DNA from: Trichoplax adhaerens
Lineage: Eukaryota > Animalia > Placozoa
DNA: 64,000 bases
NCBI RefSeq assembly: GCF_000150275.1
Contig: NW_002060953.1
Span: forward strand, 1,670,254 to 1,734,253
Direction: 5' to 3'
Made by a program: the position numbers and the translations under genes. Below the pieces are notes generated by a model. It was not told where the DNA came from. It did no database searches and saw nothing but the letters and a program-made list of their open reading frames with translations. Shown piece after piece: positions 31,286 to 61,609 of this stretch (positions within the stretch are counted from its first letter, which is position 1; every line of letters starts with the position of its first letter).

Positions 31286-33332
31286 CTATGTATGAGTATA
31301 TTGAAGCTTTTCGACGATATCTTTTCTCCCTATCGCCAATAATACTGGTGCTACAGCTGATGCAGTAAATTTTGTCGGATGTCTCTGAGAAAATTGTTTG
31401 ATGACAGCAAATGCTCTATCAAATTCAGACGAATGATCTTTAGCAATAACATCGGTGTCTATGGCCATATCCAAAGCTAAGGCAAATTTCGCCCAGTCAG
31501 TTCCTATACTGCTTACAATCATCAGCACTAAATTTAGAACGATAAATTATAATATCAGCTGTAAAAATAATAGTCGAACTTAACGAAATGGAATCCCAAG
31601 TATGAATAACAATAAATTATTAGTATGCGCTTTGAGTAAAACTGCATCTTTTACAAGTCATGCTTTCTGAAGGTCATTCAGATGGTAACGAATTACTAAT
31701 GAATTATTTAAGATTAGGGATTGAATTCCTTAACAAAAATCGTAATCTCTGATAAATATCATGAATTACAACCAGCAGTCATGTCATTCACAGTCACCAC
31801 ATTTCTAATGCATATTAGAAGCATTGCCAGTGACAATGAACATAGAAAAGCAGGTGAGTTAAAAATGAAGCAATGAATTTTTGATGGCACTGAGTTTCTA
31901 AAATTATCACCTTGAGGCTGGAAAAGTTGATCAGGAGCCATTTGATTAGGATTCAGTGGCGCATCCACTAGTTATTGTGAATGCCAATAAATTAGAAATG
32001 TAATTTTAAATTTATGATCATAATTTATTCGATAAAATAGCTTCCATTTAACCAAAGCAACGCTTCAACTCATGATATATGAATATAGAAAATCTACCTT
32101 CATCTCCTGAATGCTTTCCTTTAGAAGAACCTATAATGAGCAATTCCAAATGTCTCATATTAGCTATATGTATGTAAAGGTGTTAAATAACACACAAATA
32201 TAGGGGATATAATTTCAAGTAAAAATAGCTAACTAAAGTCTATAATTTCATTTTCACATATGACATGATAATCCATTTAATGCGTAATGGACTAGAAAGT
32301 AAGTTATTCATTCGATAAAAATTTCTACTTTATAGCTCGATATGTTTCCTATAGTAAGATTTTAAACTTTATGCATAAATGCTGTATCTTAAAAATCAGC
32401 AATTCATTCAATATGGCTGAGTTTTATCCATAGAGTATCTTATATGATAATCTTTTATGCAATTAAAGGAGTTATTTGTTGAAGACAACTGGCATTTACT
32501 TTTATCGTCTGGATATAAAGAAACAATTCCACCACCTGCCGGATTGGGGTCTGATAATGAAGACTTACTAGCTTTTCCACCTTCCAGAACAAAAGAATAC
32601 ATGTCGATAATAATAATAATTGATATATAGATTAGTTTGTCAAGTCACTTTTATTAAGACGAAGAGCATAGAATTTATGACTAATTTGCTGGGTATATCT
32701 TGCAAAAATCTAGTTGGTTTTTACTATAATAAATCTATGATATTGCTCTAAAATGCTGTGTCTAGCACACAAACAACTAGGACAGTTTATGATTTTGATA
32801 ATTTAGGAATCTATCTAAATTTGAGCAATTACTAAAAACTATAATTTTTTCTGATTTGATATTAGTATTCAGGAATGAGTTACAAATTTCGGAGATAACA
32901 ATTCTAGGCTAATTATTTTTCTTTAGTCATATCATAATATCGTTTTAAGTTGGTCTATCTACAAGAATCTAATAGGTAGCCAAGGGTTACTACGTCGGTA
33001 AAACAAAAATTTGAATGAAACGCTTTATGTAATTAAGTATTCTTACTAAAACTTTCTTTTTCCATTAGTTTTCCTAATTCTTGAATTGCTGTGGCTTCCG
33101 ATCGTTGCAATAGATAGCAAAATTCAAGCCAGTTTTCATCTGATCGATTCTCTAAAATTCTTATAAACTGAAGGTTTAGACTTTTATCCTGTTGAATCAA
33201 ATATAGTTTATCTGATTCATCATAGGTAATAATTCCAATTAAGTCCGGCAAGATGGTCCTAACGTTTATTTCCTTCATAATCCGATCCCTATATTTAGTT
33301 AGAACTGCCCGGTTTTTATCGTTTAATCCCAT
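31286..33332 (-). CDS. CARD-linker-Death domain adaptor (RAIDD/CRADD-like architecture), ~232 aa
   Basis: Exons 33047-33332 (CARD), 32500-32580, 32098-32130, 31911-31967 and 31286-31527 (DD: IGTDWAKFALAL...LLAIGRKDIVEKL). All introns are phase 1 GT-AG, total 699 nt. The linker contains GDEVDAP. Confidence 0.85.
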
Positions 33333-36300
33333 GATAAAAAAATTTGCTATTACTGGATTTTTATTCCGAAATTCAAAATACGAGTTATTTGATCCAGAAC
33401 AGATTCTAGGTGGCGATGGTGAAATACAGATCAAGACTTGGCTTAATGTTTGTTGGTCTTTAAGGAGGTAACTTGTTAAAGAAATCAGCTAAAGTATCGT
33501 AGTAAAAAGATACATTTTAAAATTTGTTAGTGACAAAAGCAAATGTCAATCAAAGATATCAAGCGAGTAATTAACGACATAAGCCATTTATCTAATATTG
33601 CTTGCATTGTTCTTTTCTAGTAAAAATATTAATAGCTTCTGAAGTATAGTGAGAAAGGAATAAGTAGTCATTTTGTTCAATTAGAAATATCAAATAAAGA
33701 TCGTCAACAAATATATAGTAGCTCGTTCCAGTTACGTTCGTTCTTGTGTACTTTATAAGCCAAATATTGTGTAGATTATTATAGATGCAAAATAACTAGC
33801 TAATCATCAAAATTTTTCTTTAGACTAGTTAAGTTTACGTCTTTTAGGAAGGCTCATTGAATGTCTTTTTAATCTTTAATTGCTTAGCTCCAGTATTTCA
33901 TGATGTAAGGCAGTTAGGTAAATATAAGAATCTTATTAACTTAAACGATACAATGATTGTGGTAACGGAACTTTTATAGAAGATACCAAAAATATTTCCT
34001 TCTTAATTTATTTCTGAACTATTAAAATGAAACTAGACTGTTCAGAATCCAATGGATACTTTTACTCCTATTTATTAACAAACTTTGGAAAATTCCATGC
34101 TGCATGAGTTAAGATGTTACTTTAAACACCTTTTAGATCACGATATTAACCAAAAAATTGCTACAAGTAAAATAGGCATCATGAAGTAGCGAACAGATCA
34201 ATTTGAAGATAATTGCAATTGATGAATTTTTAATCCTGACCTAATGTTATGAGTACAGCTTGAGTATTATGTAATTTATTAATAGGCAAAATTATAAACC
34301 GTAAGAAATCCGCGAAGCAGAAGCAGTAAACCTATTGCTCATGAATGTATTTCTCTTCAGAAATTGGCATTTGGTTTCCAAAAGCTAGGGATTATTTCAT
34401 TAGCATAACGAAATAATTTTTTATACTTGAATGTTTTCTTGTGATTTAATCCCCATATTTACGTTATCTGAGCTAAGAATTATTGATAACGTTCTCTGAA
34501 GCAGGTAATAATGATATTTTAGATCTTGCAGATATTATAAATTAGGTATTATAGATTATAGATAAGTCCTAGAGGCTCGTAGAAAATAAAACTTTCCTCT
34601 TTTGATATTTAATATTTGAAATCAGAGCAGATTCATGATTAGCATGACTACATGCAACTTAGACAGTCTAACTGATTGAAAATCGTATCTTGCACAAATA
34701 AGTAAAAATAGGTTTCGTAATTCCACTACTAACTGAAGTATTGACTTCAAACTCATCAATGTCAAGTAAGATAATCATTAGATTAAAATATCGAACTAAC
34801 TAAACGTGTAAATTACCTTTAGCCAAATGGTACGCTTGCGGAGTTTATGCTAGTTCTAGATGAAGACAAACCTTCTGTACGACTTACGACGAGAGGAAAA
34901 AGATTTTATCTAATTTGTATCATTGCAGCCCCCAAATTTCCGGAGAATGAACAATTGGCGCTGTTGCTTTCAAATAATTGTAAATAGATCTAAAAAGGGC
35001 AAATGGCCGTCATAGCATTGCATCTAAATTATCTGGCCAATCAATTAAATGATACATTGTCGTATAATAATGAAGGGCAAGACAGCCTATTATTCAAATC
35101 GATATTGTGATAACAAAAAGGCAAATTTCTATATTTTATCGGCTGTACTAGAACATTCTATCTTAGGGAATGGAAGATGCTTTTATTAACTATAAAACTA
35201 TCGAGTATCTGCTTTTGATTATAAAAATATAAAAGACGATTTAAAAATTTGGGGGACATTGTGATAACATCAGCCCACCTGATACAACTTTAATGGATTC
35301 CGGAAAATAATCTTACTGAAGCAGAATAAAATGTGGCTAACTCTCTTAGAAAATTATTCATTATGAAGAATAATTAAATTATAGTAGGTCATAAATTCAC
35401 CTATACTGATTGCAAGTCCATTTTTTTCGATCATTATTATCTAATCTATTGGAATAGAATTTGTCTAAGTTTCATATACTCGCAATAGTAATGTGTAGTA
35501 TATCAGTTAGATGACGAATACACTTTTGCATTACGCTACACTTTTGCAATATAAGGTATTCCAAGTACTATTTTTAAATTGCAACTTGTAAGCCAATAAT
35601 TTCCTGTAAAATTAAATTTTGCAGTTGCTATAAGCGTAGTTAGAGCAACAAACATTTCAAAATTAGCCCTATAGTGGATAATGGAAACTAGTTCAATGTA
35701 AAGCCTTTATTAAATTTTTCACTGATGCTTTAACTTGAGCTAGAATTTTTGATTAACCAAATAAGAAAGTCATAATAAACACCTGTTATAGGCACTAAAG
35801 CTCATTATTAACGTACGCTTATTACGAAATTGTAGGCTTGTACTGCTTCAAAGATTATGGTAAGGAATCTGACACGAAAATCGTATTTTAACTTGCTCTT
35901 GTACGCGTAGGCCATTTTACTACTTTAATTTAGAAGGCTCTGTTATAGAATGCGAATATGATATTGAGAAATTATCACCTACTGAAGTCTTAGGTAACTA
36001 TTAAGAAGTAGTTCTAGGAAAAGGCTAGATATATCGTAATATGTGAACAGGTATACCATACGGCGATGTCATATAATATCTGTACAATACTACTGTTCAT
36101 TGCTAATTTTACTAACATCGAAGTAGATTTAGTACAAGTAATACATTTTTGTTTAATGCTTTGGAACAAATAATTACCAGTATAGTAGATAATTCTGCTT
36201 ATATCCAACATCTATTAGTTACTACAAGGGTACTTCTCATTTGCCATTTGTATATCCAAAAGTAATTTCCACAATACTTGTATAAATGCAGGAAATTAGA

Positions 36301-37500
36301 CCAACTGCGTCTTATTGATTAGCTGTGATTCATTAATAAGTTGAAACAACTTTGACATATTAGGTAGCCTATATGAAAGTAACTGTTTAGTTTATCAATA
36401 CTGTTCTTGTAACAAAGAGTTAGACTTCTAAAAATTATCGGATGCTATTGATACTATAAATTATATTTACCACTTCAAGGCTACTAAGAAAATTAGCTGG
36501 GTGGTCGATAGTTTAGACTGTTGGAAATAATGCAACTAATTAAGACAAAATTGCTTTATTTCAGCTTTTAATCAATCTTCAATTTTATAAAATAAAATTC
36601 CCTAGATCTTTACGGTAAAGTACTGGTTCTTGTCTTAGACTTAAACACAGTCCCACGAGTCATGATGCATCTACTATGAACCCTGTTAGACCTAAAGAGA
36701 TATCAATAAATTTCGTACATGATACTAATTCTTCCATTTCTTTGCCTATAAATGCTTATTGCGTTTTGTATTCATTTACGTACAATAAAGAAAACTTACT
36801 TTAACCGGATAGTAATTACTACTTAAAATATTTGCTATCTATATAAGGAGTAAAACTACTTCTACTACGCTCATACAAGACAATTATTATTTCAAAGGAG
36901 CAAATATTCTCTCCTACAGTAGAGTAAAACAATAGATATTTATATTGCCATAATGGCTCCTCATGCAATTACCGAAAATTGAAAGCATTTATAAAGGCTT
37001 TAAATGTTCTTTAACATGAATGTAAAACTATTTCCAATCTTACATGAAAGTTTAAAAAGCAATAGACTTTTTCATGCTCCTGGAAAGAAAGTAGTTCATT
37101 TCGAAACAGCTTACAAAGTAATATTACCCAGAAAAATACCGTACAAGTAACGAAAACAAGAATTACATTTATTTTGAATTATTAATCCTTCCTTTCCATC
37201 ATTAAAAGAATAGAAGATTAAGGTAAATTTGCACTTAAAAGTAATAACTTCAAAGATATATCTATCAGCTACCGTACATAATTCGATATTCTAATTCCGC
37301 ATATATTTTGATTACGTTAAAGTTATTACATTATAATTCTACCAGTCAGTGTACGCTGTAATTATTTCTTAATAATTAGTAGCTATAAAATGTTCCTATT
37401 TCAAGTTCTACTTATATTAAACTATTATCAGGTAATGAGTTTTCGCCCTTTAACCGAACATGGCTCATATTTACCCAGCGTTTAGTGTCAAATTTAGGAT

Positions 37501-39189
37501 TTACAATTTTCGTAATTCAACGGCTATATCATTTCTGTAAATGGTTCTTAGGGCACTTTCTAATACAGATATAGTGGCTTTAGTTGGATTTTTCTGACTC
37601 CAAATATCCAGGAATGCTTTTGTTTGATTAAATACAGAATGACCATGCTGATATATAATGGTATCTAAATTAATATCAGAATCAAGAAATGCTGCCAGTT
37701 TTGTCCAATCCAAGCCAATTTTATCACATACTATAAAGTACGCTTTCTTCATCTTCTCTTTTGCTAATCGTCAGAAGAAGTGAAAGTCATTATAAACTAA
37801 TTAAAAGTTGTCATGACTTTCTGTAATACTGCCGCTGTGACTTTGTAGCACATAAACTCATGGCTATTTTAACGTTAAAAAAAGATTCTAAGGCTTTAAC
37901 TGACCCAAAGTAAAAACTAATAGTCCATATAATTTACAAATTAGGCAGCTAATGAAGTGCAATAGAATGAAGGATAGCTTAAGACACTAATATAGCATTA
38001 TTTTTTAAATCCATATTAGCGAATAGTAGCATAATATGTATCTTGCTGGCATACTAAACTTAATCTATTTAATTATACAGTCATTAAATCCGATAACTGG
38101 CTATGCATAAAGTTAATCTTTACTTTGGGCTAACGTTAGGCGTAACTAACATTACTTAGTATCATTGCATTCGGCTGAAAGAGCACCATGATTTACGAGC
38201 GTGCTTAGTAATAGCCTAAAAATAGTTTTAAATGTTACAAAGCTATGTAACCCAAGACTTTTAACAAAGCAAATCTCACTATGGTACGTGCAAACCCTTA
38301 ATGTATGTTAATATAAAGTCGGTAATATTTAAGTGTAGAAAATTATGAATGAAACAGCAAGACTGTAGTAAGTAATAGCTATTAGTAATGAATGAAATTT
38401 GTTATCCTTTCTGTGGAATCTAATCTACCAACCTGCATCCTCATTTTCACCTCGATCAACTATGATTTCAAGCAAAGAGCAAGCAAAAATTAGTTATTAA
38501 TTTAGTGCTAAATGACTATCGTATATATTTATATAAGTATTGTAATCCATTAAAACATATCTAAACTACCCGAGGGAATTAAGACTAAAAGGCAAATTTG
38601 ATCAATTAATGTTTAGTCTTAAGCTTTACTCACCGACATCTTCGCTGTTACTACCTAAATGAGAACCTTCAAAATAGTCCAAAAAAAAATAGATGGTATC
38701 ATTCAAGAAAGACATTAGCATAAGCTGTTACATTGAAATGACTTGATCATCTATCAATATGATCATAAAATCATAGTAATATTAGCTGATAATCTCAATT
38801 TATTTCTATGTTTTGCAGTCTAGCAATAATAGCACCATGATTTTATTATTTCGTCCCTGTTATGATATTGCTTACTCGGCTAAATTTATACCTGAAATTT
38901 CTCTGACTTCTGCTTTTAATTTTTTGCCTAAACTTTGAACGGCCGACGCTTGATATTCGATCAATGATAGATAAAACTCTTTGAAATCTTTATCGTCTCT
39001 AGTCCTAAGTATTTTTACAAATTGAAAATTTTTTTCTTTCTTTGTTTTAAAGCCACTTAAAAAATCCACTTCATGTTCGCTTAACACTTTAACAGAATGT
39101 AAATCATATACTATATCGCTTATAGGTGTCTGTGCAATAATTTGCTTCAGATTATTCTCAAGTATGTTTTGATATTCCTTAGACAACAT
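37501..39189 (-). CDS. CARD-linker-Death domain adaptor, ~202 aa
   Basis: Exons 38892-39189 (CARD), 38634-38654, 38433-38459 and 37501-37763 (DD: IGLDWTKLAAFL...LRTIYRNDIAVEL). Phase-1 introns, total 609 nt. The linker contains SEDVVDRG. Confidence 0.85.
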
Positions 39190-42100
39190 GACCAGTGTTT
39201 ACTTGATTTTTAGCCCACGCTAGTAGTCTAAAAAATGTTACCTTAAATCCGCAAAGATAATAAAACCATAAAATTATATATTTATGAGTGATTTGAATTA
39301 GTAGCAACTTTAGCAATTTCATTTAAATTTTAACTGGTGGTTTTAATCGCTGGCAAAATACATTCAATAGTCTCATAGGCCATATGCTTTTCTACTCGTA
39401 ATAAATGATCAGAGCAAATTCTTGAGGCTACGATCCTAGATCAATGTTTGGAATTTAGCATGTACTGTACTATTGCTCAAATTTTGGGATACTGGACAAT
39501 GAACAGTAATTCAGATTTTGCCATATCCTGTTAGGGTTAGATTGATTATTAAGGAAATACCATGCAGTATATGCTTGATTATATTTTTTCATGATTCCCC
39601 AAGTAGTCAAATGCTCCTTTTTAGACTAACTTTTTACACTTTTATATAGAGTGCTTGATTCATATAATGCCAGTTCATTTTAGACCTATATTAATATAAT
39701 TCTGGTTGCTCGTATTAGATGTGCTCAATGAATAAAAGAAGCCCAGAACATAAACAGTTCGATGCTGTCGTACATTTGCTAGCAACTATACTTTCTACGT
39801 TACGATCAAACTTAATATCTTCAATCATAACTTAATTATTTACTAGCTAGAATTGATTTAGGGATCTATAATTAATGCCAAAATGTCGGCATTTCTATTT
39901 AAATTTGAAAACAATCGTAAAAATAGAATGTCAGTAAGAGCTTAATCATTTGCACCATACCTCATTGTGGTGGTGAAGAAAGTAATAATGCAGATAAGTG
40001 AAAACTGAATTTATACAACGTAAAATTCATAGATGCCTGATGTAATTAGATTAACACAGAAGTTAGATTAGATAACGTACCGATATCACCAATATTACGC
40101 TTTCGATTCAATTAAGTTATAAAAGTATTCTATTATATCATTTTATAAGGGTAGCTTCTAATTGAGAAAGCAGCAGTTAAGCCATGTTTACCTTCAGAAT
40201 AATTTGTGCAATTTAGTAGTGTGTATCTGATGTAGCATTACTTCTCCATTTACGCATGCTGGTGTTTAATGCTTAACAAAGTTTGATGATTTGTTTCACC
40301 ATATAAAAATACTGGCAGATACTAAAATTCTAATTTTAGGGATTATAAATCGATTTACTCTACATTAAACTTAAAACTAAATGGTAGCTAATTATGTCGG
40401 ATAAAAAATAAATGTATATATAGCAATAATTAGTCGTTCATTAAATTATTGTTATGAAATATTACTTAAAATTTTTCGCTTATATCAATAAGTAGGTTTC
40501 AATTAGGAGCACTCTGATTATTCATTATCACCTCCGTACAACATATCATTGATTATCTATACGAGCACTAGCACCATTTAATCATCAATAATTCTAGTAT
40601 CTCATGATTGTCAACAATCTTATGTTGAACTGCATGTTATAAAGTTACCCAGACACGCTATTACAAAAGAATCAGTTTCATCTTCCATAGGATAAAATCT
40701 CAGGTTTCAGATATTTAATCCCTCTGCTAAAATCAAGTCAAAGCTCATACAGTACAAGTAATCAATTTCAGCCTTATAGGGTGCCAATCTTACTTCGATA
40801 GTCTATTTATTAACGTAAATTTACCAGTCGCGATGACGTTTTTAAGCCTGCATTATGTCGATCTCAACTGGCTTAATATCCAAGAGTAATTGATTTCAGT
40901 TTGAAGATAAAAGTTCATTGTATCTCTTAATACGGTAATGTTGAGCTTCAAAGTGCTATAATCAACATTTAACTTCCTACTTACACGTTTGCAATCTTCG
41001 ATTTCCGGCTTTACTGTGTAAGACGTAGATGCAATTTTATCTAATCGACGGTGCTTCAAACAGGATTAGGGGAGGCTTTAACTGTTTGTCGGCTGGATTT
41101 TATATCCTTCCAGGTCGGTCAGCAATCACTGTCTAATTAAGTACCATCAGAGGACTGGCCGGGATAATCTACTTGACATGCCTAGTCCAGCTTTCAGTCA
41201 CGCTATCCCACCTCTAAACCATGATCAACATAGTAGACGGCAGCCGCCGCTAAGTCATGATCGCAAATGATGAATAAGATGAGTAGGGATCAGTCTATCC
41301 TATTGTGACGTCATAAAGGCCTACTGTGAAGACGGTAAATAAGCAAGATAATGACGTTAGATAAAATTAACATACTAGATAATGTTGGATGATGATAACT
41401 ACGGTTTGCTATCGACAATTTTATATTGTTTGGAGGGATTAGATGATCTAAACTTGGATTGAAAGTAGTCATGCTTGCATCATTCGATCTCTCACTGTAA
41501 AGTTGATTAGATTACGTGTTCAGTTTACTGGCAAAAATGGCTACTAGTGGAGATAAAAATGAGTAGCTCAACTTAAACTTAAATTTAAACGGTCACGAGA
41601 TGATCGTGTAATAGACTCTTGTTATTACTGTTCATTCACCTTCGAAACCAAAATTTGAGTTAATAAAATGTAGTAAATCTTGCATGTGACACACGAAGCT
41701 AGTCTCATACTAGAAATAATAAAAGTGTGCTGTTTAATTCTATTTGAATCATACTATTGCAATTAGCTGAAACTATGACACGTTGATACGCATCGATAAG
41801 CTGAAATTATTAGATAATGTTCGATGATGATAGCTATGACCCCTGCCTGTATATTAGATTGACTTAAAAAATGTTTTGACGATCTAAACTTGTTTTAAAA
41901 TATCTGTAAGACAAACAATTTTAACCGAAAAGCAACGTGAAGGAAATTTTCATCTGTACATGATATTAACCTACATGTAACATAGTATAGCAATCTCTGA
42001 TGAATGTTTGTAGCCATGTCGGGTTCGTCCTACTAAATTAGCTGCATCTTTACTGATGTAAGCAGAAGTAGGGACTTCTGGCTGCTCTGGATACAAGCTT

Positions 42101-43537
42101 GCATCTTTTGGTAAATTACTAACGTATTCATTAAATAAACAATTTACGTTCTATTTTAATCGAAACTAATCTCAAAAGTAATAGTACTTTACATAGTTGT
42201 AAATATGCAGGTCAGGAGATGGCAAATGTTTAAAGTAATGCTTCATACTTAACTTTTCTAGCTATATCTCATGCCACTGAAATTATTATCTTTATTGTTA
42301 CCTCATTTACTCAAAAATCCGTTATTTTACAAAATCACTAGGCGTTTTGTAAAACCACTACGTAAGTCTACAAAATCGATTTTAGAATAGTTAGAAACTG
42401 CTTCCAGTTATACTCAACTAAGCAGCATTGTAGAATTAAAATATTGTATTCCAATTACACCTATCCACTCATCACCTTGGAGTAAACGGAAAATGATCAA
42501 ACCTGTAAATACCGTATCTAACACTATGCTAATATGTTACAAAAATATGATAAAGTAAAATGATCTTAATCGTTTCCTCTATAAATGGTTGGATGAAACT
42601 TTCATTATTTCACATTTAAAAAAGATATCAAAATATTACGAAATGCTTTAAATCCATTTATTTAAAAGAGAGACAAGATAACAAAATTGATTGATAAAAT
42701 TATTGAGAGAATATTACCAAATCTAAGCAATTTTCGAAAAAAATTCGAACATTCTTTAGGGAGTTATGTAGGGGTATAAATAAAATAATTACCATTTCAA
42801 ATCATTGATATAGTATATTACATACTGGACTTTTGCAAAATGCATTCATTTATATAAATTATGTAATTTAAATATCGGCATTACTGCCGGAAGGGATGAG
42901 AACACGAGCGTTAAGCTCTAAAGGAAATAAAGCCGTCGAAATAAGAATAATAAGGAAGCTGACAAAGAAGACAGATTAAATAGGGTGGTTTAGTTTGCTG
43001 ATTAATACGATCATTCTTAATAAATGAGTGAAACTTCAAATACAATTAATCAATGAAAAGGAATTAATAAATGGTCAGCATAGTCTATTTTTTTTAGAAA
43101 AAATCGACTAATAACTTTCGAAAGGAAGTAATTACTGCTATACTTGGAGGTACCAGTTCAGGTTGGCATTCAAGATTCTATAATGTTACATTATAAGAAA
43201 AAATTACATCAGTAGCTTAAACAAAATTTTGAAACTGAGTAACGTATGAAGAGCTAACAATCTTAGTTATTTATCAATCATCTTTAGGCGTTAAAAAACC
43301 ATGGCCAATGATATATCGGTTGCTATTCGTTATATCTCTTAAAATTTAAACTTATAATTTATCGATTGCTGAAATTAGCAATTTGTTTAGTTAGCCAGTT
43401 ATAGCATGTACCGTATCACGAGTGAGAAAATGCACCGGTGAATTTTCTATATGAAAGGAGTACGTCAAAAATCAACATGAAATCTTTACATGATAAACTT
43501 ACTATGTATCCCATTTAAACCTTGAGTACTCGCCATT

Positions 43538-45080
43538 CTATTGTTTGTCGACTTTGAGGAAAAGAAGAATGATAGTTATAAATTAATTTTAGTGAATTAT
43601 ATAGTTGCATATGACAATTCATTCTGGATAACTTCAATACTTACCAACATCTGCTCCTAACTCTCCTATCACCATCGAATCATCGGAGATTACGATGGAA
43701 ATAAATTAAATGAAATTAATATTTAATATTTAATAAATCATTTAAAAGTCCATTTAAAAGATTTAGCTATCATTAGTAGTCTAGATATGATCCAGTATTG
43801 TTACAGGCAATTACCTCCTTTATTTCCTTCTGCAAGGGAAAGATTGTAAAGGAATTAGCAGATATTATTAATAAATTAAGTTACTTTAAGACCTTATATC
43901 TCGTAAATTTGTTGCAATCAAATACAAAATTTACACTGTTAGAGAAAAATTTGCCATATAAACCTCAATGCTATCTTATGTAAATACTGAAGTTTGATGA
44001 TGTTATCCTAACCTATAATCAGACATTTATTGCTTGAGTAGATACTGTAAACTTTTTATACAAAATAAGTATAAAGTGATTTAGCAGCAAGAATTACGTA
44101 GCAGCTTGCATCTAAAAAAATTTTAAATTTAAAATAATACTGATAGTATTATCCTACCTATATTTAGATATTTACCTAAAATGATCAGTTTAACAGCAAG
44201 AACAACTAAAGCCATGATATAACTACTGTAATTGCTCTAAAAATTTCTCAATGCAATCACCAGTTATTTTTATGTATAGTACTTCAAATGTAAGAATAAA
44301 AGCTCTACCTTGGAATAAATCTACATCAACTGAACGAGGGAGTTTTAATTTGCTACTGAAGGTGGGCTGTATAGAAAACTATTTGATTGGGATTTATTTA
44401 TACTTTAATTGTACAAATTATAAGAAATGGATAGCAGAAGTTATATTTGGGTCTACGAAGCTGTAGCATGATACATTATAACGATATTGCAGCCAACTGA
44501 AAGTGGTCAATTTTGTTTGATATTCCAGATATAAGTGTCTATTTTTGAGTTACTGTATTCCATTAAACCTGCTATTGTCATAGTCTATCGCGCTCATACC
44601 GGGAAAACTTATATTATTTCCGTAGATGTCTACATCAGGTAATGTTTTTGGATTTTCTATATGGTAGACGTCAAAATATATAAGATAGAAAAAGTTTCAT
44701 CATTATTGCTTGAAGCTGAATCATCAAAATCTGTGTCTAACGCTTCTAAACATCATTTTCTTATAACTACCAATATTTGCCTTACCTTCAGTGTCCAATT
44801 GCAGTTTTGCTCCGAAAGCTTTGACAACGTTGACATGGTGCTGTTTTAGCAAGCTACAGAAAGTATAGAAATCCTCATTTGAACGTTGTTCTTGTAAGAT
44901 TTCCAATAGCCTTCCGTTCATATCTTCAACATGAGTTAATTTTTCTATATCGATAATATCTCTACTACTTAGAATTTTTTTAACTTTCAATTTTGTAAAT
45001 AACTCTTTGATTGGAACAATTTTGATAAATTCTTCTGCGTATTTATCAAGATTAGCTTTAATAATGTCACTTAATTCCAT
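43538..45080 (-). CDS. CARD gene truncated after the linker (CARD-only product or pseudogene)
   Basis: Intact CARD exon 44786-45080, roughly two-thirds identical to the CARD at 61318-61609. Candidate phase-1 micro-exons 44600-44656, 43815-43829, 43645-43665 and 43521-43551; the last reads VDKQ* (TAG 43538-43540). No DD exon found downstream by eye. Confidence 0.6.
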
Positions 45081-45869: not shown

Positions 45870-46050
45870 TAGTGATGTAAGCGTCTGCGTAGACTTCATT
45901 AACAATAGATTGCGGTTTCTTTATTCTAAATAAGAGAAAATAACAATAATAAAGTATATAATAAAAGGTCGATGATAAGAATTGCAAGTAGAAGTTAGTA
46001 AAGGGGATCAATACAGTACTTATAAATTATTCATGAAGGACTGGCTGATG
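45870..46050. other. Upstream homology block shared with ~62755-62932
   Basis: TGCGTAGACTTCATTAACAATAG vs TGCGTAGTCTTTATTAACGATGG, and TAAATTATTCATGAAGGACTG vs TAAATTATTCATGAAGGATTG, both upstream of the two closest CARD paralogs. Confidence 0.6.
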
Positions 46051-46132
46051 AATTTACTTTAACCACCATTTGTCAATCATGTACAAATTTTATTGAGTTA
46101 CTTGAAGATTTAATTGTAAGATAGTTAAATGT

Positions 46133-53500: not shown

Positions 53501-54128
53501 CGAAAAATTTTAATTTAATTTTAATTAACCTGTGCTTTATGACAAAATTTGGTTCAATAATGCATTTGCTGATAAATTTGGCAAAACTAAGTGGTTCTTT
53601 CGGTGGTTTATCTTTCTGCTCTATAATATAAGCGATGATGGCTTCGATCATATCTTCAGCCAGTTTCTTAATATAGTGATTATCGTATGCGTCAGAAATG
53701 ATAGATATTTGTTGCTCGTAGATTCTGACGAGATCGCAAGCTATCATCGATATAGCCAATTCAACGCGATCATTGTTGGGAGTTAGATGATCAATGATTT
53801 TCTTAATTGACCTACGATCATATCTTTCGGCAATTTCTGAAATTAAAGTTTGTATTAATGACATTCCTTGAACTAAATTAAACGGACCATCTGTAGGGAC
53901 AAATTGTAAGCACGATAGGATACCAGTCAAAAATTGTGTTGCAGTATTTGCAATCATCCCAGGCTTTAACTTAATTTCTTTTTCCAGGACTTGAGATAAA
54001 ACTTTTAATTTGATGGTAAACTTCTGAATAAAAGTGATTAAAAATTGTTTAATCTTTGGTCCGTTTTTGAATTGACTGATATTATCAAAGTCTTCTGGCC
54101 ATTCTTTCTTCTCTTGCATATTTGCCAT
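50534..54128 (-). CDS. ~628-aa protein: uncharacterised helical N-terminal domain, coiled coil, acidic linker, C-terminal Death domain
   Basis: Exons 53530-54128, 52769-52861, 51519-52450 and 50534-50796 (intron phases 2, 2, 1; total 1887 nt). The last exon is absent from the ORF track and reads ELSTDVRNYFFIVADHIGTDWTKLALKLNYKINTDIIIEEKRLVYDQARTMLKKWHNMESIEATTTRLVQALFEIERKEIVTLMYDS*, paralogous to the other DDs. Confidence 0.75.
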
Positions 54129-56649
54129 GTTAATATTGAAGAGCCTTGACTACGCGCAAATTAGAATCAAAATATTTTAAATCTCAGTATCGAGTGTTTA
54201 TTGCACCATTTCAGATTGACTTGAGACCAATTTCTCTTTAATCAATATTCTACATCCTTTCTCAGCAAATATTAAAGTAATCCAGTTTGTTGCTTATTTG
54301 AGAACCGATTTTATATCATGTCCAGCAAGATCCGTACGATACTGCTATCTTGAAGGTCTATTAACGATGGCATTTTCTTTTCCACATGTTTTGCTATCTT
54401 GAAGTTTGATATTAAAGATGACCAGAAAAATATTTCTCCTTATTTTAAAAAAACACTGCTTTTCCGATTCTTTGTAAGCTTAAATCTTTTAATAAGTTCG
54501 AGTTTTAATATAAAGGTAACATTTTAAAGAATTAAAATAGTAGATGAGAAAACTCTAGCGCACAGCACAGGTTTTAAGTTATAATAAGCGATGTAATACT
54601 ATCAGAGAACCGTTGCAAGAAAGCCCTAGCTTACAATTAGGGAAGTGAATTACTTTCGAGTTGACCTTTAGAATAGCCCCAAAAATGATTTGGAATGCAC
54701 ATATTTATTTAATGAACAAAATCCATATCAATTATCATAATTTTTAATGAACTATGCAAATATTGCTATATTTAATATGATAACATTGATATCGAGAAAT
54801 AACCAATCATTTTATAGCTGTATTTTAATCATTTTGATTTACTGTAAATCCGTGGTAATAAAATGCGAGTCATTTATTTTCAATAGCTGTTGAAAGACGA
54901 ATTGTTGATAACGTGGACTGGAGTTAGTAATTTATGTCAGATCAAAGCAATTAAAGTCTGTCGTTCCTCGAAAAGAGGATACATACTTCGAAAATTATGT
55001 TGTACTGTAAAAAGATAATCATTTTGTAAAATATTTGAAATTTGAATGAGCTCATAAGCCAGCTGCTCTATAAAAAATAAATATAGCTAAAGCTAAGACT
55101 GTAAGGTTGTCTAAATACGTGTTTGTGGAAGATAATTACAGAACGTATTATAGCAATTCCGTTGATATATTGTGTCATCATGCAAGGACATAAATAGATT
55201 GCACAAGAATATATGCTATGAGATTTATATTGTGTCAGTCTAATTAGAAGCACGAATTATGAACGAATTTTCCCCGTAAATTTAACTTTATCAGGCGACC
55301 TTATTGGCAAGATATGTTTATGCTCCTGATAATAATTTTGTAACAAAATGTATAATAATTATGTCGTTTGTAAGTTACGCAGTTGTAAACTGAAAAGAGC
55401 ACTTGGTAGTTGTATAACAAATTTAATTCACGTACTCAAGCAAAGTTTACAAGAAATAAGTTCTCGTGTATTATTTTGTAGACACATTATCACAAAAGCC
55501 TATGTAACATCTTACAAATTTTTAACATATCGCTCGATTGGCTGGCTTTTAATTAAGACGGAGTCAGGCTCTTTAATTAAATTAAAATATGTAAATTTAT
55601 TAGAATAAAAACAAGTTATAGTTGTTTATTGAAATTTAAGGTTCGTCAAGTTGGAGCAGAGTACTTAACTAACGTTGATATTGTTATGATACATTATGCT
55701 CGTAGTAAATCTAGGTTAATGCTATTTCTTACTCTGTAATGATAGCATCAGTTTACTGTGCTGTAGAATTTTGCACTGTAAAATTTGCATTCTACTCTGC
55801 TGTAGAATTCTACACTGTAAAGTTGTCCCTATTGTGCCACCGTAGGTGAACTTATAAAATTCTTATACAACGGACTTGATGTAGATGGTACCCAATTTGG
55901 AAGGTTACTAATCTTTTATTCTGACTTTATTTCTGCATTTTAATTTCAAATTATTCTCTCTTAATGATCAAACGTAAGGCAGTACTTATATTATATCAAA
56001 ATAAGTGAAAAAATATGCTAGTGAAAAAATTTAATGGTACTGCAGTTTTTAATGCTATAGCTGTAGTAGTTTCAATAGCTCGATTTCAACGCTTGCATAC
56101 AACTTGATAAAGCAGTATAATTGAGATAATTTTAGAGGCAAATTTAGAGATAAAAATCTCTGAAGGCCATTTAGTCTTTGGAACATAACTTCACGAATAA
56201 TCGACAGCCATTAAATCAATATTGCTCATATTTTACTTAGAAAACCATCATTCTTTACTCACTGTACATAATATTCAAAATCACTTCTATAATCATAGCC
56301 GTTCGGTTTGATACAGCTGTATTAATACTGATTTTATTAATAAAATCAAAGTAAGGCCTAGTGATTCAAATTCTATTAAATAATTATATATGGCTTTCGC
56401 GGCATTTATAAACCGAACAATCTTAGTTGGAGACTGATTTTAATGAGCATCATAAAATAAATGAAATGACAAAATCTACTTCTTTTACGCGATACTCTAT
56501 CAACTATCAATATAAATTAGTACTTTCAATTAAAGTGCAAGTCAAGTTAGTAATAGATACTCAGGATACTGAATTGAAATTTACAATATCTAAAATCACT
56601 AGTGTTACAATAGACATTATCATTGCTAGTAGTAGCCACTCTTTACTTT

Positions 56650-57400
56650 TCTTCTATGATTGGTTAGACGGAATATATATGCAGACAGATCTATAAAGTT
56701 TTTTACGTTTTATCGGTAGATATTATTCCGATCCAAAAATTTATTTCCATTAGTCTAAATCTCTTGCTCAAATTCCACTTACCCTCCCTTGAAATGAGCA
56801 GCGCGGGGGTATTTATACTACTGTTAAATGACTCTGATTATGGGTTCATTTCAATAGGTCAGTATAAGATTCTTACAGTACTTTTTACCTCAAGATTTCT
56901 TCATGTGAAACGAATAGCTCTAACGTAGTCATTTCTGCAGAGTACTGATCATTAAAATAGTATTCGTTTATATCGGTAAGGGTGGCCACTGGGCCTTTCA
57001 ATTTTGATTTTATGTAATATTCTGATGAAAATTGAATAAACATAGAATCTTTATAGAGTTTTCTACACAGCCATTTTGATTGTTGAATTTTCTTATAACA
57101 GTTGCTATCGACAGAGCAAGCTTTGCTTGCATACTCAAGCAATCCTTAGACACATTATCATGATTGGTATAGAATTAACCACTGTACTATGGACATTGTA
57201 CCGCACTGTCGATATCTTACAGTACCTGCTAATCTTAACTTGGCATGGCCATCACCATACATTAGTTATCATCATGTGCTTTGGATTATTAACTAATCTT
57301 AATATAGCATTTCATCCGTGAATGCATTCTTGAAAAGTAGTATTCTACAAGCTTAGCTGTGAATATAGTAGTGCCTGGCTATTACCGGGATATAAATAAT
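56650..57400 (-). pseudogene. Possible decayed Mab-21/cGAS-like nucleotidyltransferase remnant
   Basis: Broken minus-strand frames give GHAKLRL, KWLCRKLYKD..F, KGPVATLT...YSAEMTTL, KWNLS and RKKLYRSV, in the order of loosely similar Mab-21-family motifs. Many stops and frameshifts; weak. Confidence 0.25.
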
Positions 57401-57749
57401 GTCGAACGGTAATACTATCTGTTAATTATTAACAAATGAGTACATTATCGTAAACCTTCAGCAAAGCGACGTGAATTGTACTAGTATAAATTAAACCTAG
57501 CCTGAAGAACTAATGTTGGCCGAATTAGCCTAACCATTACAAATGATTCTTTACTAGCACATTTTGCATACGTAACCGCGTGTTGCAAATAGTCGATTGC
57601 ATGACATACAACTACTTCGTTGATAAGACGCTAAATGTCTCAAAGTCTAACATAGATACATAGGCGTCTATCCTAATAATCTGCCTATCTCATGATATTT
57701 TGTAACGAAACTAAGTATTGTGAAAATAGACTTTTAGTCACGTTAGTGA

Positions 57750-59140
57750 GATGTACGGAAGCATAACTTTCTATATCCATCTTAAGACGTATTTGGTAGC
57801 ATGGACGGTAATGGTAGATTCTATGCTATAGTACAGCTGACTATATATAGTAAGGTTTTGAGTTACTATTAAGGTTAGAGGTAAAAATAAAACTGTAATT
57901 CATATATTAGAATATGCTTAGTTTACCTTACTTTGGCTGCTAAGAATAATATTCAGGGCAATACTGTAGTTGTTTCCACATCGGGTTAATGATGATCTGC
58001 TGTAACTTCAACTTCTAGATTGTAATTCAAGCCTATACAAAGCTTTAATTTCCTCAGATGACTATCGATTTTCGCCCTTTCGAGGAACTTGTGCCAAATT
58101 AGCTATAGCATTATTTAATACATAACTTTATTAATGAATCTACTATACAAATGAATCTCAATTCTAGGGATTACTAAGCCTTAGCTTAGAAAAGTGAATT
58201 AACGTCACAATCCACATTTTACTTTTTAAAAATTCGTATAAGCTGTTATGGTAAATTGATCCACTTAATAACGTAATCATGGCCCTTTTACGCATAACGG
58301 AGGTCGGAACAACCTTAACTTAAACAGAATTAAATGGCCAAAAAGCTTGAAATACCCTAGGATATTAATTTTTATAAACCGTGTCGTAGAATTTAAAGTC
58401 GCTTTACTGAATTCTACCGAACAAAATCGTCATTTTGGATTAATGATATTTATGACTCGAAAAAATCCTTGTTTGGCTCTTTCTTAAACTGTAAATTCTT
58501 ACGTTGCAATATTTTACATTATTTGATTTATTTGTACTTAGCCAACTCATGCTAGAAATCATCCAAATCTAAATCTTTGAAAGAGATGGTTGGTGATATA
58601 CGAGAAGTATCATGTTTATAAGAAATAATATTAGCCAATCTATTGGAAATCTGAATCTTATACGATTAATATTAGTAAATATGATAATTCAAACCAATTA
58701 TACTGGCTACATTTTAATACATCTAATAAGTAATATAATACTTGATTTTGTATACAATGGTCTTATAAGTATTTGACGACTGTCCTAAGTTACCCTGAGT
58801 TACCAGCTTAGAGTTGCAATATGATATGATTAGGTATTTGTAATGTAACTAGTATTGTTATTGTAGACTGCTAGTCATGTTTAGTATAATGTACGGTAGA
58901 TATTATCCTAAGATATATTTGGTAGCTAGAACTATAGACTGTAGTGGTAGAGACTCTATGCTAGAGTACAGATGACTATATACAGTAAGCTGTTGAGTTA
59001 CTAATATAGCTATAGGTAAAAATAGAACTGTAAATCATATATTAGGATATGGTTAATTCATTATACTTTGGCTGGTGTGAATAATATCTACGTAAGTACT
59101 GTAGTCGTATCCATATTGGATTAATGATGGTCCGCAGTAG
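57750..59140. repeat. Dispersed direct repeat pair (~57750-58004 and ~58890-59140)
   Basis: Collinear blocks ATTTGGTAGC...CTATGCTA.AGTACAG.TGACTATATA.AGTAAG...GGTAAAAATA.AACTGTAA.TCATATATTAG...TTAATGATG in both copies, roughly 80% identical by eye. Confidence 0.8.
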
Positions 59141-60204
59141 AATAATCTTACTAAGAATAATTTAACTAAGTGTAAAATAAGGTAAAAGGTGCCATGCGGA
59201 TTGTAGCTGCGAATGCTACGAAAAGTATAAAAGCATGCAACTTTAGATTATTCTGTTAGTTCGTTCTAGAAGTCTTTAGTAGTAGTAATCGGCTAGAGTA
59301 GAGCTGTGTGTAGTTAATCTTTGTATAAGATTCAATAAAGTCCTTATTTTTCTAAATTTTGGAATTTCGTGATTGGGATATATCACAGTATTAAACTATA
59401 TTTTATATCCATTCCAAATATCAACAATACAATTATGAGTAGATTCATTTTATTACTACAGCAGAACAGAACCAAAGGATAATATTTGTCACTCAACCAA
59501 TATAAGAACGATAGCTAGAGTATTCTTCAAGGATTTTAAGGTAGTATTATCAAATATTTGTATGGGATAAACATAAACCATTAGCGCATTAAAACTTAAA
59601 ATATATTATAATTTAGAAGTCTTAAAATTATTTTAGTGATAGTGTTATTTAATCATTACAATTTAGAAAATAAAAAATTGCAATCAAGTTCGAACTAAGG
59701 GGTAATCCTTAAAAATTAATTTACAGCCAAAAATTAAAAGTAATACGAAAATAACTAAATTTGTTTCTTGAATGTCGTCATTTTATTTTGCTCAAGCTAT
59801 TTCCCGTCTGAGTAGATCTTGCTTGCAAAACTTGACGTATTGAATGATCTAATCGATTTATTACTTCGATAAAACCAATTAGAAATACTCCCGGATACAG
59901 AGTTCCTTTGATTTTATCAGTTTCTATTCGCTGATTGATTGTCCTTGGTTCCATTATTTGCCCCGAAAGAGAAATTTTCATTGATAATTTACCTAAACTA
60001 ATGAATAACATTTAAGAATATTTAAATCTACCAAGATGATTCTGTTGGTGTACTAAAAATCAATATAATGTCAAATTTTTATTCTTAATTTACAAAAATC
60101 TACTAGCACTTAAGTGGCCGTAACTTTCTTCAAAGTATGAAACTCAACTATTGCATTACAAGGAAGCGAATGTAAGGAAGGTAATTAGAAAACTAGAAAA
60201 TAAA

Positions 60205-61609
60205 TTACTTAACACTCACGAAATCTTTCACAATATCTTTCCTGTCAATTGCAATAAGCACTTTTACTAAAGCTTCAGTGGTTGCTTCATTACCGGACAT
60301 GTTATACCATTTGCTCAAGACCGCTTTTGCTCGATTGAAAACCACACTTTGCTCCTCTGCAATAACACCTACATCTATATTTTCGTTAAGCTTGCCCGCT
60401 AATCTAGTCCAGTCATTACCAATTTTGTCGGCGACAGTGTAAAAGTAGCCCTTCACATTAGCTAAAATTTCCATGAAATCATTTTGAAATAAGATTGGGT
60501 AAGATTAATTTCAATTAGATACTTTAGCGGTATTTCTAGAAGCAAGATTGAACAAATGTAGCTATCCCTTAAACTTGTCTAATTATATTATCAATCCTTA
60601 TATGTCTTGAATTTGCATGATTTCAGTGATAGAAGCTTAATACAGTAATTAATATTAAACATCGATACCAAAATCACTCAGATGTACTTGTTATCGTAAT
60701 CTAACCTGACAATGTTGATTCTACTTCCATCGGTGAGTCAACTGTATGAATAGAGATCATATTAAATTTAGATCACTTACTTGGAATTCATGTATGAACT
60801 GAACATTTTACGTTGTATATTGCTTAAATTTATAGTAGCGCTATAACTTAATTTCCTTGAAAGAAATACTAACCAACATCTTGTCCATTAGGATCTATGA
60901 TTAGTGAGATCGTTGATAGATTTTAATCCATATTTAACAAATCAGATCAGTATTAATAAATAGCTCATAGTATTTCTTTAGTAATTAGTATAATCTAGTA
61001 TTATCAGGGCTACAATAATCATTATACTTTCTATCAGTAGCTATCTCTAATATTACTTCCTTGCTTGCAAACAAGAAGGACAAGCTAGATTCAATAAATT
61101 AACTTACTTGTTCGGTGATCTTTCCGTACTAGCTTGATAGGCGTTCCTGCAATTATGAAATCAATTAGTTTAGGTATAGACCACTAATATATAAAATTGG
61201 CAATTCTAGTAATAAATATAGATCAATTTAATTAGGAAGGGTTAGAGTTCACTTATCAATATAGCACTATTATATTATTCATGCAATAATATTCACTTCA
61301 ATTGAAAGATTGTTTACCTTTAGCATCATCCTGTAGTTTAGCACCGAAAGATTTCACAACATTAACACCATTGCTTTTAAGTAAGTCACAAAACGTATAA
61401 AAATCCTCTTCTGCACGTTCTTCCATTAAGATTTCTAATAGCCTTCCATTCATATCTTCTGTGTGGGTTAAAGCTTTGATATCCGTCACTTGTCTTGTAC
61501 TCAATATCTTTTTCATTTTGAGCCTAGTAAACAATTCTTGGATAGGAACAATTTTAAGGAATTGATCACTATTTTTATCCAATGCAGCCTGAATGTCTGG
61601 ATTGTCCAT
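60205..61609 (-). CDS. CARD-linker-Death domain adaptor, ~214 aa
   Basis: Exons 61318-61609 (CARD), 61108-61146, 60874-60894, 60706-60741 and 60205-60461 (DD: IGNDWTRLAGKL...LIAIDRKDIVKDF). Phase-1 introns, total 645 nt. The linker contains GQDVVDSP. Confidence 0.87.

What the first reader, a model, noticed from the sequence alone, without database searches (positions are those of the whole stretch)
31911..60894. Conserved DxxD caspase-type site built across a micro-exon junction in the CARD-DD linkers
Seen: after splicing, the divergent low-complexity linkers share a D-x-V-D motif whose Val codon is split by a phase-1 intron. The sites are GDEVD|AP (32098/31967), SEDVVD|RG (38634/38459), GADVVD|KQ (43645/43551) and GQDVVD|SP (60874/60741). 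Three of the upstream micro-exons are exactly 21 nt and end in GATGT(C/T)G. The CARD-CARD linker has DSHD|G and the large DD protein has DCQD|H. Established: DEVD/DxxD is the preferred caspase-3/7 recognition motif. Inference: these adaptors are built to be cut between their two death folds, either as feedback shut-off or to release active or decoy modules. Skipping one symmetric micro-exon would keep the frame and remove the site, giving a splice-controlled cleavability switch. I do not know of this being described for RAIDD-type adaptors.
Basis: partly seen in the sequence, partly recalled or inferred. Interest (0 to 1): 0.9.

Follow-up and report, generated by a model that had tools for sequence, protein, structure and literature searches.

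The report
Conserved caspase-type motif in adaptor linkers
A cluster of Trichoplax CARD-death-domain adaptor genes keeps a D-(E/V)-V-D motif in the linker between the two domains; it matches the likely self-processing sites of the animal's own caspases, so these adaptors are probably cut by caspases, though nobody has tested it.

Summary
All four junctions exist at the stated coordinates, with GT..AG borders and a Val codon split in phase 1. RNA contigs confirm the junctions of genes B and C. Annotated Trichoplax proteins confirm A, B and D.

Corrections:
- B's exon is 33 nt, not 21, in both RNA and annotation.
- Gene C has an in-frame TAG two codons after the motif and no death domain, so it is CARD-only.
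- DSHD and DCQD are generic DxxD, at chance level.

The core D-(E/V)-V-D is truly conserved. Its codons differ only at synonymous sites, apart from the E/V difference at P3. This holds between paralogues whose domains are at most about 40% identical or undetectable, and between C and D, whose introns no longer align. The same split-codon motif occurs in two contigs from other placozoan-like genomes. By contrast, 28 other CARD loci and 20 other death-domain loci lack it.

New support: five of six caspase genes examined carry Asp-P1 motifs of this type at the inter-subunit processing position (DNVD|G, DEVD|A, DIVD|SP and others).

Caspase cleavage of the linker is the best explanation (about 0.5) but is untested. 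Paralogues G and H lack the motif. No exon-skipping joint was seen, so the splice-switch idea is unsupported. My look-ups of this scan's notes found no earlier record of this motif.

The parts
33047..33331 (-). Gene A, CARD exon (ATG 33331, phase-1 donor after 33047)
   Evidence: Sequence; Pfam CARD_2 weak hit, E 0.0011; identical to TrispH2_011160 / P0035
32098..32163 (-).
   Evidence: P0035 peptide ..TNMRHLELLIIGSSKGKHSGDE|VDAP
31911..31967 (-). Gene A 57-nt exon starting TG GAT (completes Val, then P1 Asp, then APLNPN..)
   Evidence: P0035
31286..31527 (-). Gene A death-domain exon
   Evidence: Pfam Death 25.0 bits, above cut-off
38892..39189 (-). Gene B CARD exon
   Evidence: Pfam CARD 28.7 bits; joint 38892/38666 in X5
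38634..38666 (-). Gene B 33-nt exon (GSHLGSNSEDV + G), not 21 nt; an internal AG at 38655 could give the 21-nt form
   Evidence: Joint 38664->38890 (cut +2) in X5; P0030 peptide
38433..38459 (-). Gene B 27-nt exon (completes Val, then DRGENEDA)
   Evidence: Joints 38459/38634 (X5) and 37763/38433 (X15, X5)
37501..37763 (-). Gene B death-domain exon
   Evidence: Pfam Death 48.9 bits; joint
44786..45080 (-). Gene C CARD exon (69% identical to D's CARD)
44600..44656 (-). Gene C 57-nt linker exon (ENPKTLPDVDIYGNNISFP)
   Evidence: present in P0002; its 3' end appears in the loose ends at 43667
43815..43829 (-). Gene C 15-nt micro-exon
   Evidence: Loose ends at 43667 in X15, X16 and X5 read through it
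43645..43665 (-). Gene C 21-nt micro-exon (GELGADV + G)
   Evidence: Joint 43551/43645 in X16 and X5, and in X15 with a synonymous variant
43503..43551 (-). Gene C 49-nt exon: completes Val, then D K Q, then TAG at 43540-43538. The protein ends here, so it is CARD-only
   Evidence: Joints 43551/43645 and 43177/43503 in three runs; no DD by tblastn
61318..61609 (-). Gene D CARD exon
   Evidence: P0001 = TrispH2_011164, 99% identical
61108..61146 (-). Gene D 39-nt linker exon (GTPIKLVRKDHRT)
   Evidence: P0001
60874..60894 (-). Gene D 21-nt micro-exon (NPNGQDV + G)
   Evidence: P0001
60706..60741 (-). Gene D 36-nt exon (completes Val, then DSPMEVESTLS)
   Evidence: P0001
60205..60461 (-). Gene D death-domain exon
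   Evidence: Pfam Death 42.2 bits
26014..26079 (-). CARD-CARD gene, 66-nt linker exon containing DSHD|G (26059-26048), inside the exon and not at a junction
   Evidence: P0091
51550..51561 (-). DCQD in the large helical/coiled-coil death-domain protein, inside a 308-codon exon; generic DxxD

Best explanation
The window, from Trichoplax adhaerens, holds tandem RAIDD-like adaptor genes. A, B and D are CARD-linker-death domain; C is a CARD-only derivative. Their short linker carries a short linear motif, (G/S)-x-D-(E/V)-V-D, which has been kept by purifying selection while the rest of the linker diverged.

The most likely function is a caspase cleavage site. A caspase would cut after the second Asp and uncouple the CARD (caspase-recruiting end) from the death domain (platform-binding end). 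The caspase could be one recruited through the CARD or a downstream executioner. Cutting would either shut the platform off or leave single-domain fragments that cap it.

Shown: the junctions, their use in mRNA, the conservation, and the match to the caspases' own linker motifs. Inferred: that cleavage occurs, and what it does.

The intron splitting the Val codon is an inherited phase-1 intron position. It is not known to be functional.
For: 1. Junctions and reading frames were read directly. They are used in RNA contigs and present in annotated proteins.
2. Selection at the protein level. Codons for P4, P2 and P1 differ only at third positions: GTC/GTT/GTG for the split Val, GAT/GAC for P1, plus a synonymous strain variant in run X15.
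3. The genes carrying the motif are old duplicates. A and B CARDs are 32% identical. D's CARD and A's or B's give no tblastn hit. Death domains are 38-40% identical. Only the CARD exon of C still aligns with D at DNA level.
4. Two contigs from other placozoan-like genomes keep the same split codon. L048 reads SGDDV|VDSID upstream of a D-type death domain that is 46-48% identical. L085 reads KDE|VDTS downstream of a CARD that is 40% identical to A's.
5. Specificity. 28 other CARD loci show one D.VD in 41 kb downstream. 20 other death-domain loci show only background hits.
6. The genome has at least six caspase genes. At the position of the inter-subunit processing site after QACRG they carry DNVD|G, DHVD|G or DHID|G plus DEVD|A (L077-L079), DVPD|S plus DVTD|F (L080/L082), and DIVD|SP plus SAVD|K (L081/L083). 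These have the same form as the adaptor motif (DEVD|AP, DVVD|SP).
7. In paralogue E the old acceptor is lost. Both candidate new acceptors, 12 nt apart, restore x-V-D|S (MEVD|S or DVVD|S).
Against: - No cleavage data exist.
- P1' is Arg in B and Lys in C, which human caspase-3/7 disfavour (established knowledge, not tested here).
- In C the site lies two residues from the C-terminus, so cutting there would do little.
- Neighbouring CARD-DD paralogues G and H, and CARD-DD proteins P0074 and P0062, have no DxxD in the linker. The site is therefore not a general property of such adaptors.
- The exon models for L048, L085, E, G and H are my own predictions without RNA support.
- The single-sequence AlphaFold model was too poor (mean pLDDT 37.5) to show that the linker is disordered.
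- That the caspase-linker motifs are real processing sites is inferred only from their position relative to human caspase-3 IETD|S.
Confidence: 0.5

Rival explanations
1. The motif is a conserved short linear motif with a non-proteolytic role, for example a docking or regulatory contact for another death-fold protein, or an intramolecular contact that sets CARD-DD geometry. Its likeness to caspase sites would then be coincidental.
For: Conservation alone shows constraint, not cleavage. B and C have Arg/Lys at P1', which is poor for known caspases. C keeps the motif although nothing lies downstream to be released.
Against: I know of no other motif class that fits D-(E/V)-V-D. The same genome's caspases carry the same form at their processing position. 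Paralogue E keeps a V-D|S with either candidate acceptor, which fits a requirement for Asp at P1.
Confidence: 0.2
2. The conserved bases serve splicing. The 3' end of a very short exon and the start of the next act as exon-definition signals, and the encoded residues are a by-product.
For: The conserved stretch straddles an intron next to 15-33-nt exons, which need strong definition signals. GATGTYG recurs in B, C, D, E and L048.
Against: The variable positions are exactly the synonymous third bases. A and L085 have GAA instead of GTN yet still encode an acceptable P3. The first bases of the downstream exon (T-N-G-A-Y) vary only synonymously. An RNA signal would not respect codon positions.
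Confidence: 0.08
3. The motif is simple inheritance without function. The genes are tandem duplicates and the motif has not yet decayed.
For: D and E are 73% identical across the whole locus, introns included, so that pair is uninformative. All carriers lie in one cluster on one contig.
Against: A, B and the D group have diverged until CARD similarity is barely or not detectable, and their linkers are otherwise unalignable. The 5' half of the micro-exon is completely different between C and D while the 3' part is kept. Two other genomes keep the motif.
Confidence: 0.1
4. One reading: regulated skipping of the symmetric upstream exon removes P4/P3 and makes the adaptor uncleavable, acting as a splice switch. 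This could hold in addition to the best explanation.
For: All linker exons are phase 1-1, so skipping keeps the frame. Skipping would remove the P4 Asp in B and D (my reading of the sequence). The principle is known elsewhere, for example a huntingtin isoform lacking a caspase site (PMC9536263, abstract seen).
Against: No joint skipping the exon was reported in four runs, whereas constitutive joints and intron-retaining contigs were. These were contigs, so rare isoforms would be missed. In the annotated model of A, skipping would recreate a DxxD (DKMD). P0002, the only model that skips C's micro-exons, is not matched by any RNA joint seen.
Confidence: 0.1

Closest known systems
RAIDD/CRADD, the CARD-death-domain adaptor of the PIDDosome (mammals)
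   Same: It has the same two-domain architecture: an N-terminal CARD, a short linker and a C-terminal death domain. Its expected role is to bridge a death-domain platform to a CARD caspase.
   Different: Orthology was not tested. Trichoplax has a family of such genes, not one. A long caspase-2 review (PMC7290664) and a full-text search gave no report of RAIDD being a caspase substrate. From memory, the human linker has no DxxD (untested).
Caspase substrates cut in an inter-domain linker (PARP1 DEVD|G, BID, RIPK1, Drosophila IMD cut by Dredd)
   Same: They have a P4 Asp / P1 Asp motif in a short linker between folded modules of a cell-death or immune signalling protein. Cleavage separates the modules.
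   Different: Cleavage is not demonstrated here. P1' is basic in two of the genes. No conserved IAP-binding neo-N-terminus appears after the cut (A, R, K, S, S, T).
Caspase inter-subunit linker processing sites (human caspase-3 IETD|S, caspase-7 IQAD|S)
   Same: Trichoplax caspases carry motifs of the same form as the adaptor motif at the equivalent place after QACRG.
   Different: Those sites lie within proteases and drive activation. In the adaptors the cut would separate two interaction domains.
CARD-only proteins (ICEBERG/CARD18, COP/CARD16, INCA/CARD17)
   Same: Gene C encodes a CARD plus a short tail and nothing else. It arose by duplication of a longer CARD gene, as the mammalian decoys did.
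   Different: C ends two residues after the conserved Asp, so it resembles the predicted N-terminal cleavage product of a D-type adaptor. Any decoy function is untested.
Splice isoforms that lose a caspase site (huntingtin exon-12 truncation, PMC9536263 and PMC4444280)
   Same: They set the precedent for the proposed splice-controlled cleavability.
   Different: No skipping isoform has been seen here.

Membership tests
RAIDD/CRADD-type adaptor | N-terminal CARD | tested here: met
   Pfam CARD scores (cut-off 23.9 bits): B 28.7, above; C 23.7 and D 21.6, just below. A hits CARD_2 at 19.4 bits, E 0.0011. Mutual tblastn hits link them.
RAIDD/CRADD-type adaptor | C-terminal death domain in the same protein | tested here: met
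   Pfam Death scores are above cut-off for A (25.0), B (48.9) and D (42.2). The domains are joined in RNA contigs (B) and in annotated proteins (A, B, D). Gene C does not meet this feature: a stop follows VVDKQ and no DD is present.
RAIDD/CRADD-type adaptor | Orthology to CRADD; binds PIDD death domain and caspase-2 CARD | not testable with these tools
Caspase substrate site | Asp at P1 and Asp at P4, with a non-acidic, non-aromatic P2 | tested here: met
   DEVD (A) and DVVD (B, C, D). The motif matches the caspases' own linker motifs.
Caspase substrate site | Small P1' residue (Gly/Ser/Ala) | tested here: inconclusive
   P1' is Ala in A and Ser in D and L048, but Arg in B, Lys in C and Thr in L085. 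One Trichoplax caspase linker motif itself has Lys at P1' (SAVD|K).
Caspase substrate site | Site lies in an exposed, flexible region | tested here: inconclusive
   The site lies between the Pfam CARD and Death boundaries in a 20-67-residue linker. The AlphaFold single-sequence model was uninformative, with mean pLDDT 37.5.
Caspase substrate site | Actual cleavage after the P1 Asp | not testable with these tools
   This needs biochemistry or N-terminomics.
Alternatively spliced micro-exon cassette | Very short exon (about 30 nt or less) included in mRNA | tested here: met
   C's 15-nt and 21-nt exons appear in RNA contigs. D's 21-nt exon is in the annotated protein. B's exon is 33 nt and A's is 33 or 66 nt, so they are not micro-exons in the strict sense.
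Alternatively spliced micro-exon cassette | Isoforms that skip the exon | tested here: inconclusive
   No skipping joint was reported in four runs, but only contigs were available and they drop rare variants.
CARD-only decoy protein (gene C) | CARD with no other domain, expressed | tested here: met
   The spliced transcript path, with the stop, appears in three runs. No DD lies downstream. Decoy activity was not tested.

The most novel reading that the evidence does not exclude
Placozoan RAIDD-like adaptors are obligate caspase substrates. The caspase they recruit cuts the linker at a motif identical in form to the caspase's own activation site, giving an ancient self-limiting platform. Gene C is then a genomically fixed mimic of the N-terminal cleavage product, acting as a built-in decoy. 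Alternative use of the phase-1 linker exons or acceptors (B 33 vs 21 nt; E's two acceptors 12 nt apart) would tune cleavability.
Probability: 0.12. Interest if true: 0.7.

Novelty: new variant of a known kind. Interest (0 to 1): 0.5.

Why it matters
If the motif is cut, a feedback step would be wired into a caspase-activating adaptor of one of the earliest-branching animals: the adaptor is destroyed by the protease it recruits. That step is not described for mammalian RAIDD.

The finding also gives a cheap, precise experiment: three small proteins, one Asp each, and a handful of Trichoplax caspases. In addition, the caspases' own linker motifs yield a first sequence-based guess at placozoan caspase specificity (D-x-V-D).

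It is not a new principle. Caspase sites in inter-domain linkers of signalling proteins are common.

Tried and rejected
1. Orthologue search. The search for homologous proteins with D's CARD ORF, P0035 and P0030 returned only Trichoplax H1/H2 proteins. The one representative search gave mostly exon-sized fragments.
2. Contigs fetched for those fragments were mostly other architectures or too short. L044 and L046 are CARD-NB-ARC, L053 is TPR-DD, and L050, L054 and L056 are too short or lack the motif. Only L048 and L085 were informative, and the far domain is off-contig in both.
3. The idea that the motif belongs to a general death-domain exon cassette was rejected. 20 other DD loci lack it, and the neighbouring large DD protein has no such exon.
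4. An IAP-binding neo-N-terminus after cleavage was rejected, because P1' is not conserved.
5. TRAF- or CK2-type motifs around the site were rejected, because they are not conserved between paralogues (my reading).
6. Regex hits in L040 and L041 (DA|VD) were rejected. The putative downstream exon runs into a stop, and the better model gives GADA|DSSKSD.
7. An AlphaFold single-sequence model of P0001 was uninformative.
10. I could not find the CARD exons of the C1402 caspases within the fetched flanks.
Searches used single exons by reference or database proteins.
Full report
**What is in the window**

The window is AT-rich (about 31% G+C). It is Trichoplax adhaerens contig C1404, bases 1670254-1734253. 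An annotated T. adhaerens protein, TRIADDRAFT_59576, is identical to gene B. This confirms the organism named in earlier scan notes.

On the minus strand lie four CARD exons and three death-domain exons (Pfam; tblastn). They form four genes:
- A: 33331-31286
- B: 39189-37501
- C: 45080 to about 42652
- D: 61609-60205

A CARD-CARD gene (26822-24816) and a large helical death-domain protein (54128-50555) sit beside them.

**Checking the observation**

Each has a GT donor, an AG acceptor and a Val codon split after its first base.

Contigs from four runs, laid on 37701-43700, give the whole spliced path of B and the 3' part of C:
- Gene B: 38892>38666, 38634>38459 and 38433>37763. X5 has all three joints; X15 also has the last one.
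- Gene C: 43645>43551 and 43503>43177, seen in X15, X16 and X5. Loose ends at 43667 read back through a 15-nt exon into a 57-nt exon.

Database proteins from the H1 and H2 annotations contain the spliced peptides of D (P0001), A (P0035) and B (P0030).

Three corrections are needed.
1. B's exon is 33 nt (38666-38634, peptide GSHLGSNSEDV) in both RNA and annotation. The 21-nt form would need the internal AG at 38655.
2. A's exon is homologous to B's: both are 33 nt from the GTTCT start, and 19 of 33 bases are identical. The annotated model starts it further upstream (66 nt) and adds an 81-nt exon.
3. Gene C ends at an in-frame TAG two codons after the motif (..GADVVDKQ*) and has no death domain, so it is a CARD-only gene. 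The annotated model P0002 avoids the stop by skipping the micro-exons, but none of the RNA joints match it.

The two additional sites, DSHD|G and DCQD|H, exist. They lie inside exons and lack Val at P2. They belong to the generic DxxD class, which occurs at about 0.5% per residue, so they carry no weight.

**Is it more than chance?**

The split-codon pattern (GAY NNN G gt..ag TN GAY) occurs about once per 14-30 kb in controls. It is present in all four CARD-downstream intervals of about 1-1.5 kb.

D.VD occurs at about 5e-4 per residue. Downstream of 28 other CARD exons of this genome I found one D.VD in 41 kb, counting all three frames. Upstream of 20 other death-domain exons I found only background hits. 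The motif is therefore specific to this adaptor cluster.

Common descent explains its presence. The real question is whether selection kept it, and the evidence says yes.
- The four codons differ between genes only at synonymous third positions. The split Val is GTG, GTT or GTC; P1 is GAT or GAC; and one RNA run carries a further synonymous variant. The single exception is P3, which is Glu in A and Val in the others.
- The genes are old duplicates. A and B CARDs are 32% identical. D's CARD does not hit A's or B's by tblastn. Death domains are 38-40% identical.
- Only the CARD exon of C still aligns with D at DNA level.
- Within the 21-nt exon, the first 8 bases of C and D all differ, while 11 of the last 13 agree.
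- D and its neighbour-cluster copy E are recent duplicates (73% identical over introns) and count as one lineage.

**Other genomes**

Protein searches found no full-length orthologues outside Trichoplax H1/H2. Two genomic contigs from other, more distant placozoan-like organisms were informative.

- L048 is an ENA metagenome contig. Its death domain is 46-48% identical to the D-type domains. It has an 18-nt exon ending GATGTTG|gt and a next exon starting TTGAT, which reads SGDDV|VDSID.
- L085 is a Logan contig. Its CARD is 40% identical to A's and 56% identical to the CARD-CARD gene's first CARD. It has two open phase-1 exons of 54 and 51 nt that read ..YKDE|VDTS...

Both exon models are my own predictions without RNA, and in both the partner domain is off the contig.

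**Paralogues without the motif**

- G (C1404:1757326-1758498) has no DxxD in my best models.
- H (C1404, near 1807562) also has none.
- The CARD-DD proteins P0074 and P0062 have none either.
- E has lost the ancestral acceptor. Its two candidate acceptors, 12 nt apart and in frame, would give ..NDV|AMEVD|S or ..NDV|VD|S. A Glu-to-Asp change relative to D makes either version end in V-D|S. That looks like site turnover under a requirement for Asp, but it is inference.

**A link to the genome's own caspases**

Pfam Peptidase_C14 finds about six caspase genes. I read the exon ORFs after the QACRG active site. This is the place where human caspase-3 is processed at IETD|S (established knowledge).

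| Caspase genes | Motifs after QACRG |
|---|---|
| L077-L079 | DNVD|G, DHVD|G or DHID|G, then DEVD|A |
| L080/L082 | DVPD|S and DVTD|F |
| L081/L083 | DIVD|SP and SAVD|K |
| L084 | none in the linker, but KDVVD|C in the large subunit |

The probable processing sites of Trichoplax caspases therefore have the form D-x-V-D with a variable P1'.

**Mechanism and its limits**

Best explanation (about 0.5): a caspase cuts after the second Asp and separates the CARD from the death domain. That would end adaptor function or create capping fragments. C, which stops two residues after the Asp, resembles the N-terminal product.

The junctions, their use in mRNA, the conservation and the motif match are shown. 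Cleavage and its consequence are inferred.

The main rivals are a non-proteolytic linear motif (0.2), inheritance without function (0.1) and a splicing signal (0.08). The splicing signal is disfavoured because variation follows codon positions.

The splice-switch extension (0.1) has no support. No skipping joint was reported, although contigs cannot exclude rare isoforms. The phase-1 intron is the family-wide pattern noted by earlier scan notes, and nothing indicates it is functional.

**Literature**

- A placozoan immunity paper reports many Apaf-1 paralogues and two neighbouring CARD-caspase genes, but says nothing on these adaptors (PMC6321704).
- A large caspase-2 review describes RAIDD at length without any cleavage of it (PMC7290664).
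- A full-text search for RAIDD plus caspase cleavage plus linker gave nothing relevant.
- Splice isoforms that drop a caspase site are known for huntingtin (PMC9536263).

I searched exons by reference and used database proteins.

**Verdict**

This is a real, conserved and specific D-(E/V)-V-D linker motif in a placozoan RAIDD-like adaptor subfamily. It is plausibly a caspase site and is a new variant of a known kind. Interest 0.5.

Noticed in passing
window 42652-45080 (minus strand): Gene C is a transcribed CARD-only gene with 57-, 15-, 21- and 49-nt exons, a stop 35 nt before the last exon junction and a long 3' exon. The database model P0002 (133 aa) has a different C-terminus that none of the RNA joints match.
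   Followed up: partly
window 39237-41103 (minus strand): Gene B has a 1743-nt intron in its 5' UTR (joint 39237/40981 in three runs), with a first exon near 40981-41103. Contigs retaining the 225-nt intron after the CARD exon are also present (X16 record 16, X5 record 22).
   Followed up: no
L077-L084 (G000:C1408:4596367-4642713 and C1402:1307141-1316797): Five of six caspase genes carry two Asp-P1 motifs, mostly D-x-V-D, in the inter-subunit linker. The sixth (L084) lacks them but has an insertion with KDVVD in the large subunit. This offers a sequence-based guess at placozoan caspase specificity.
   Followed up: partly
L031 (G000:C1404:1797300-1799500, minus strand): Paralogue E is a recent copy of D (73% identical over 1.55 kb, introns included). 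It has lost the acceptor before the V-D exon and has two candidate replacement acceptors 12 nt apart. A Glu-to-Asp change keeps a V-D|S with either one.
   Followed up: partly
L044 and L046/L047 (Logan and ENA contigs): In other placozoan-like genomes, D-type CARD exons (46-52% identical) are followed by an NB-ARC P-loop exon. The same CARD type therefore serves both Apaf-1-like ATPases and CARD-DD adaptors.
   Followed up: no
L053 (ENA contig): A B-type death-domain exon (51% identical) follows a TPR-repeat exon. This is a different architecture using the same death-domain type.
   Followed up: no
P0062 (RDD35994.1, Trichoplax sp. H2): This protein is named 'Caspase-2, partial' by its source, but the 351-residue sequence reads as death domain - CARD - death domain with no protease domain visible. 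The name looks misleading.
   Followed up: no
window 39888-42605: Run X11 covers this stretch with overlapping unspliced contigs (gaps near 40323-40767, 41924-41973 and 42163-42414) and has almost no depth on gene B's or C's exons laid here. It is probably DNA or an unrelated transcript.
   Followed up: no
G000:C1404:1745500-1749300 (L032) and 1756900-1812500: The CARD/DD cluster continues beyond the window on the same contig: F (CARD-only, P0003), G, H and its near-copy (L041), plus L015.
   Followed up: partly
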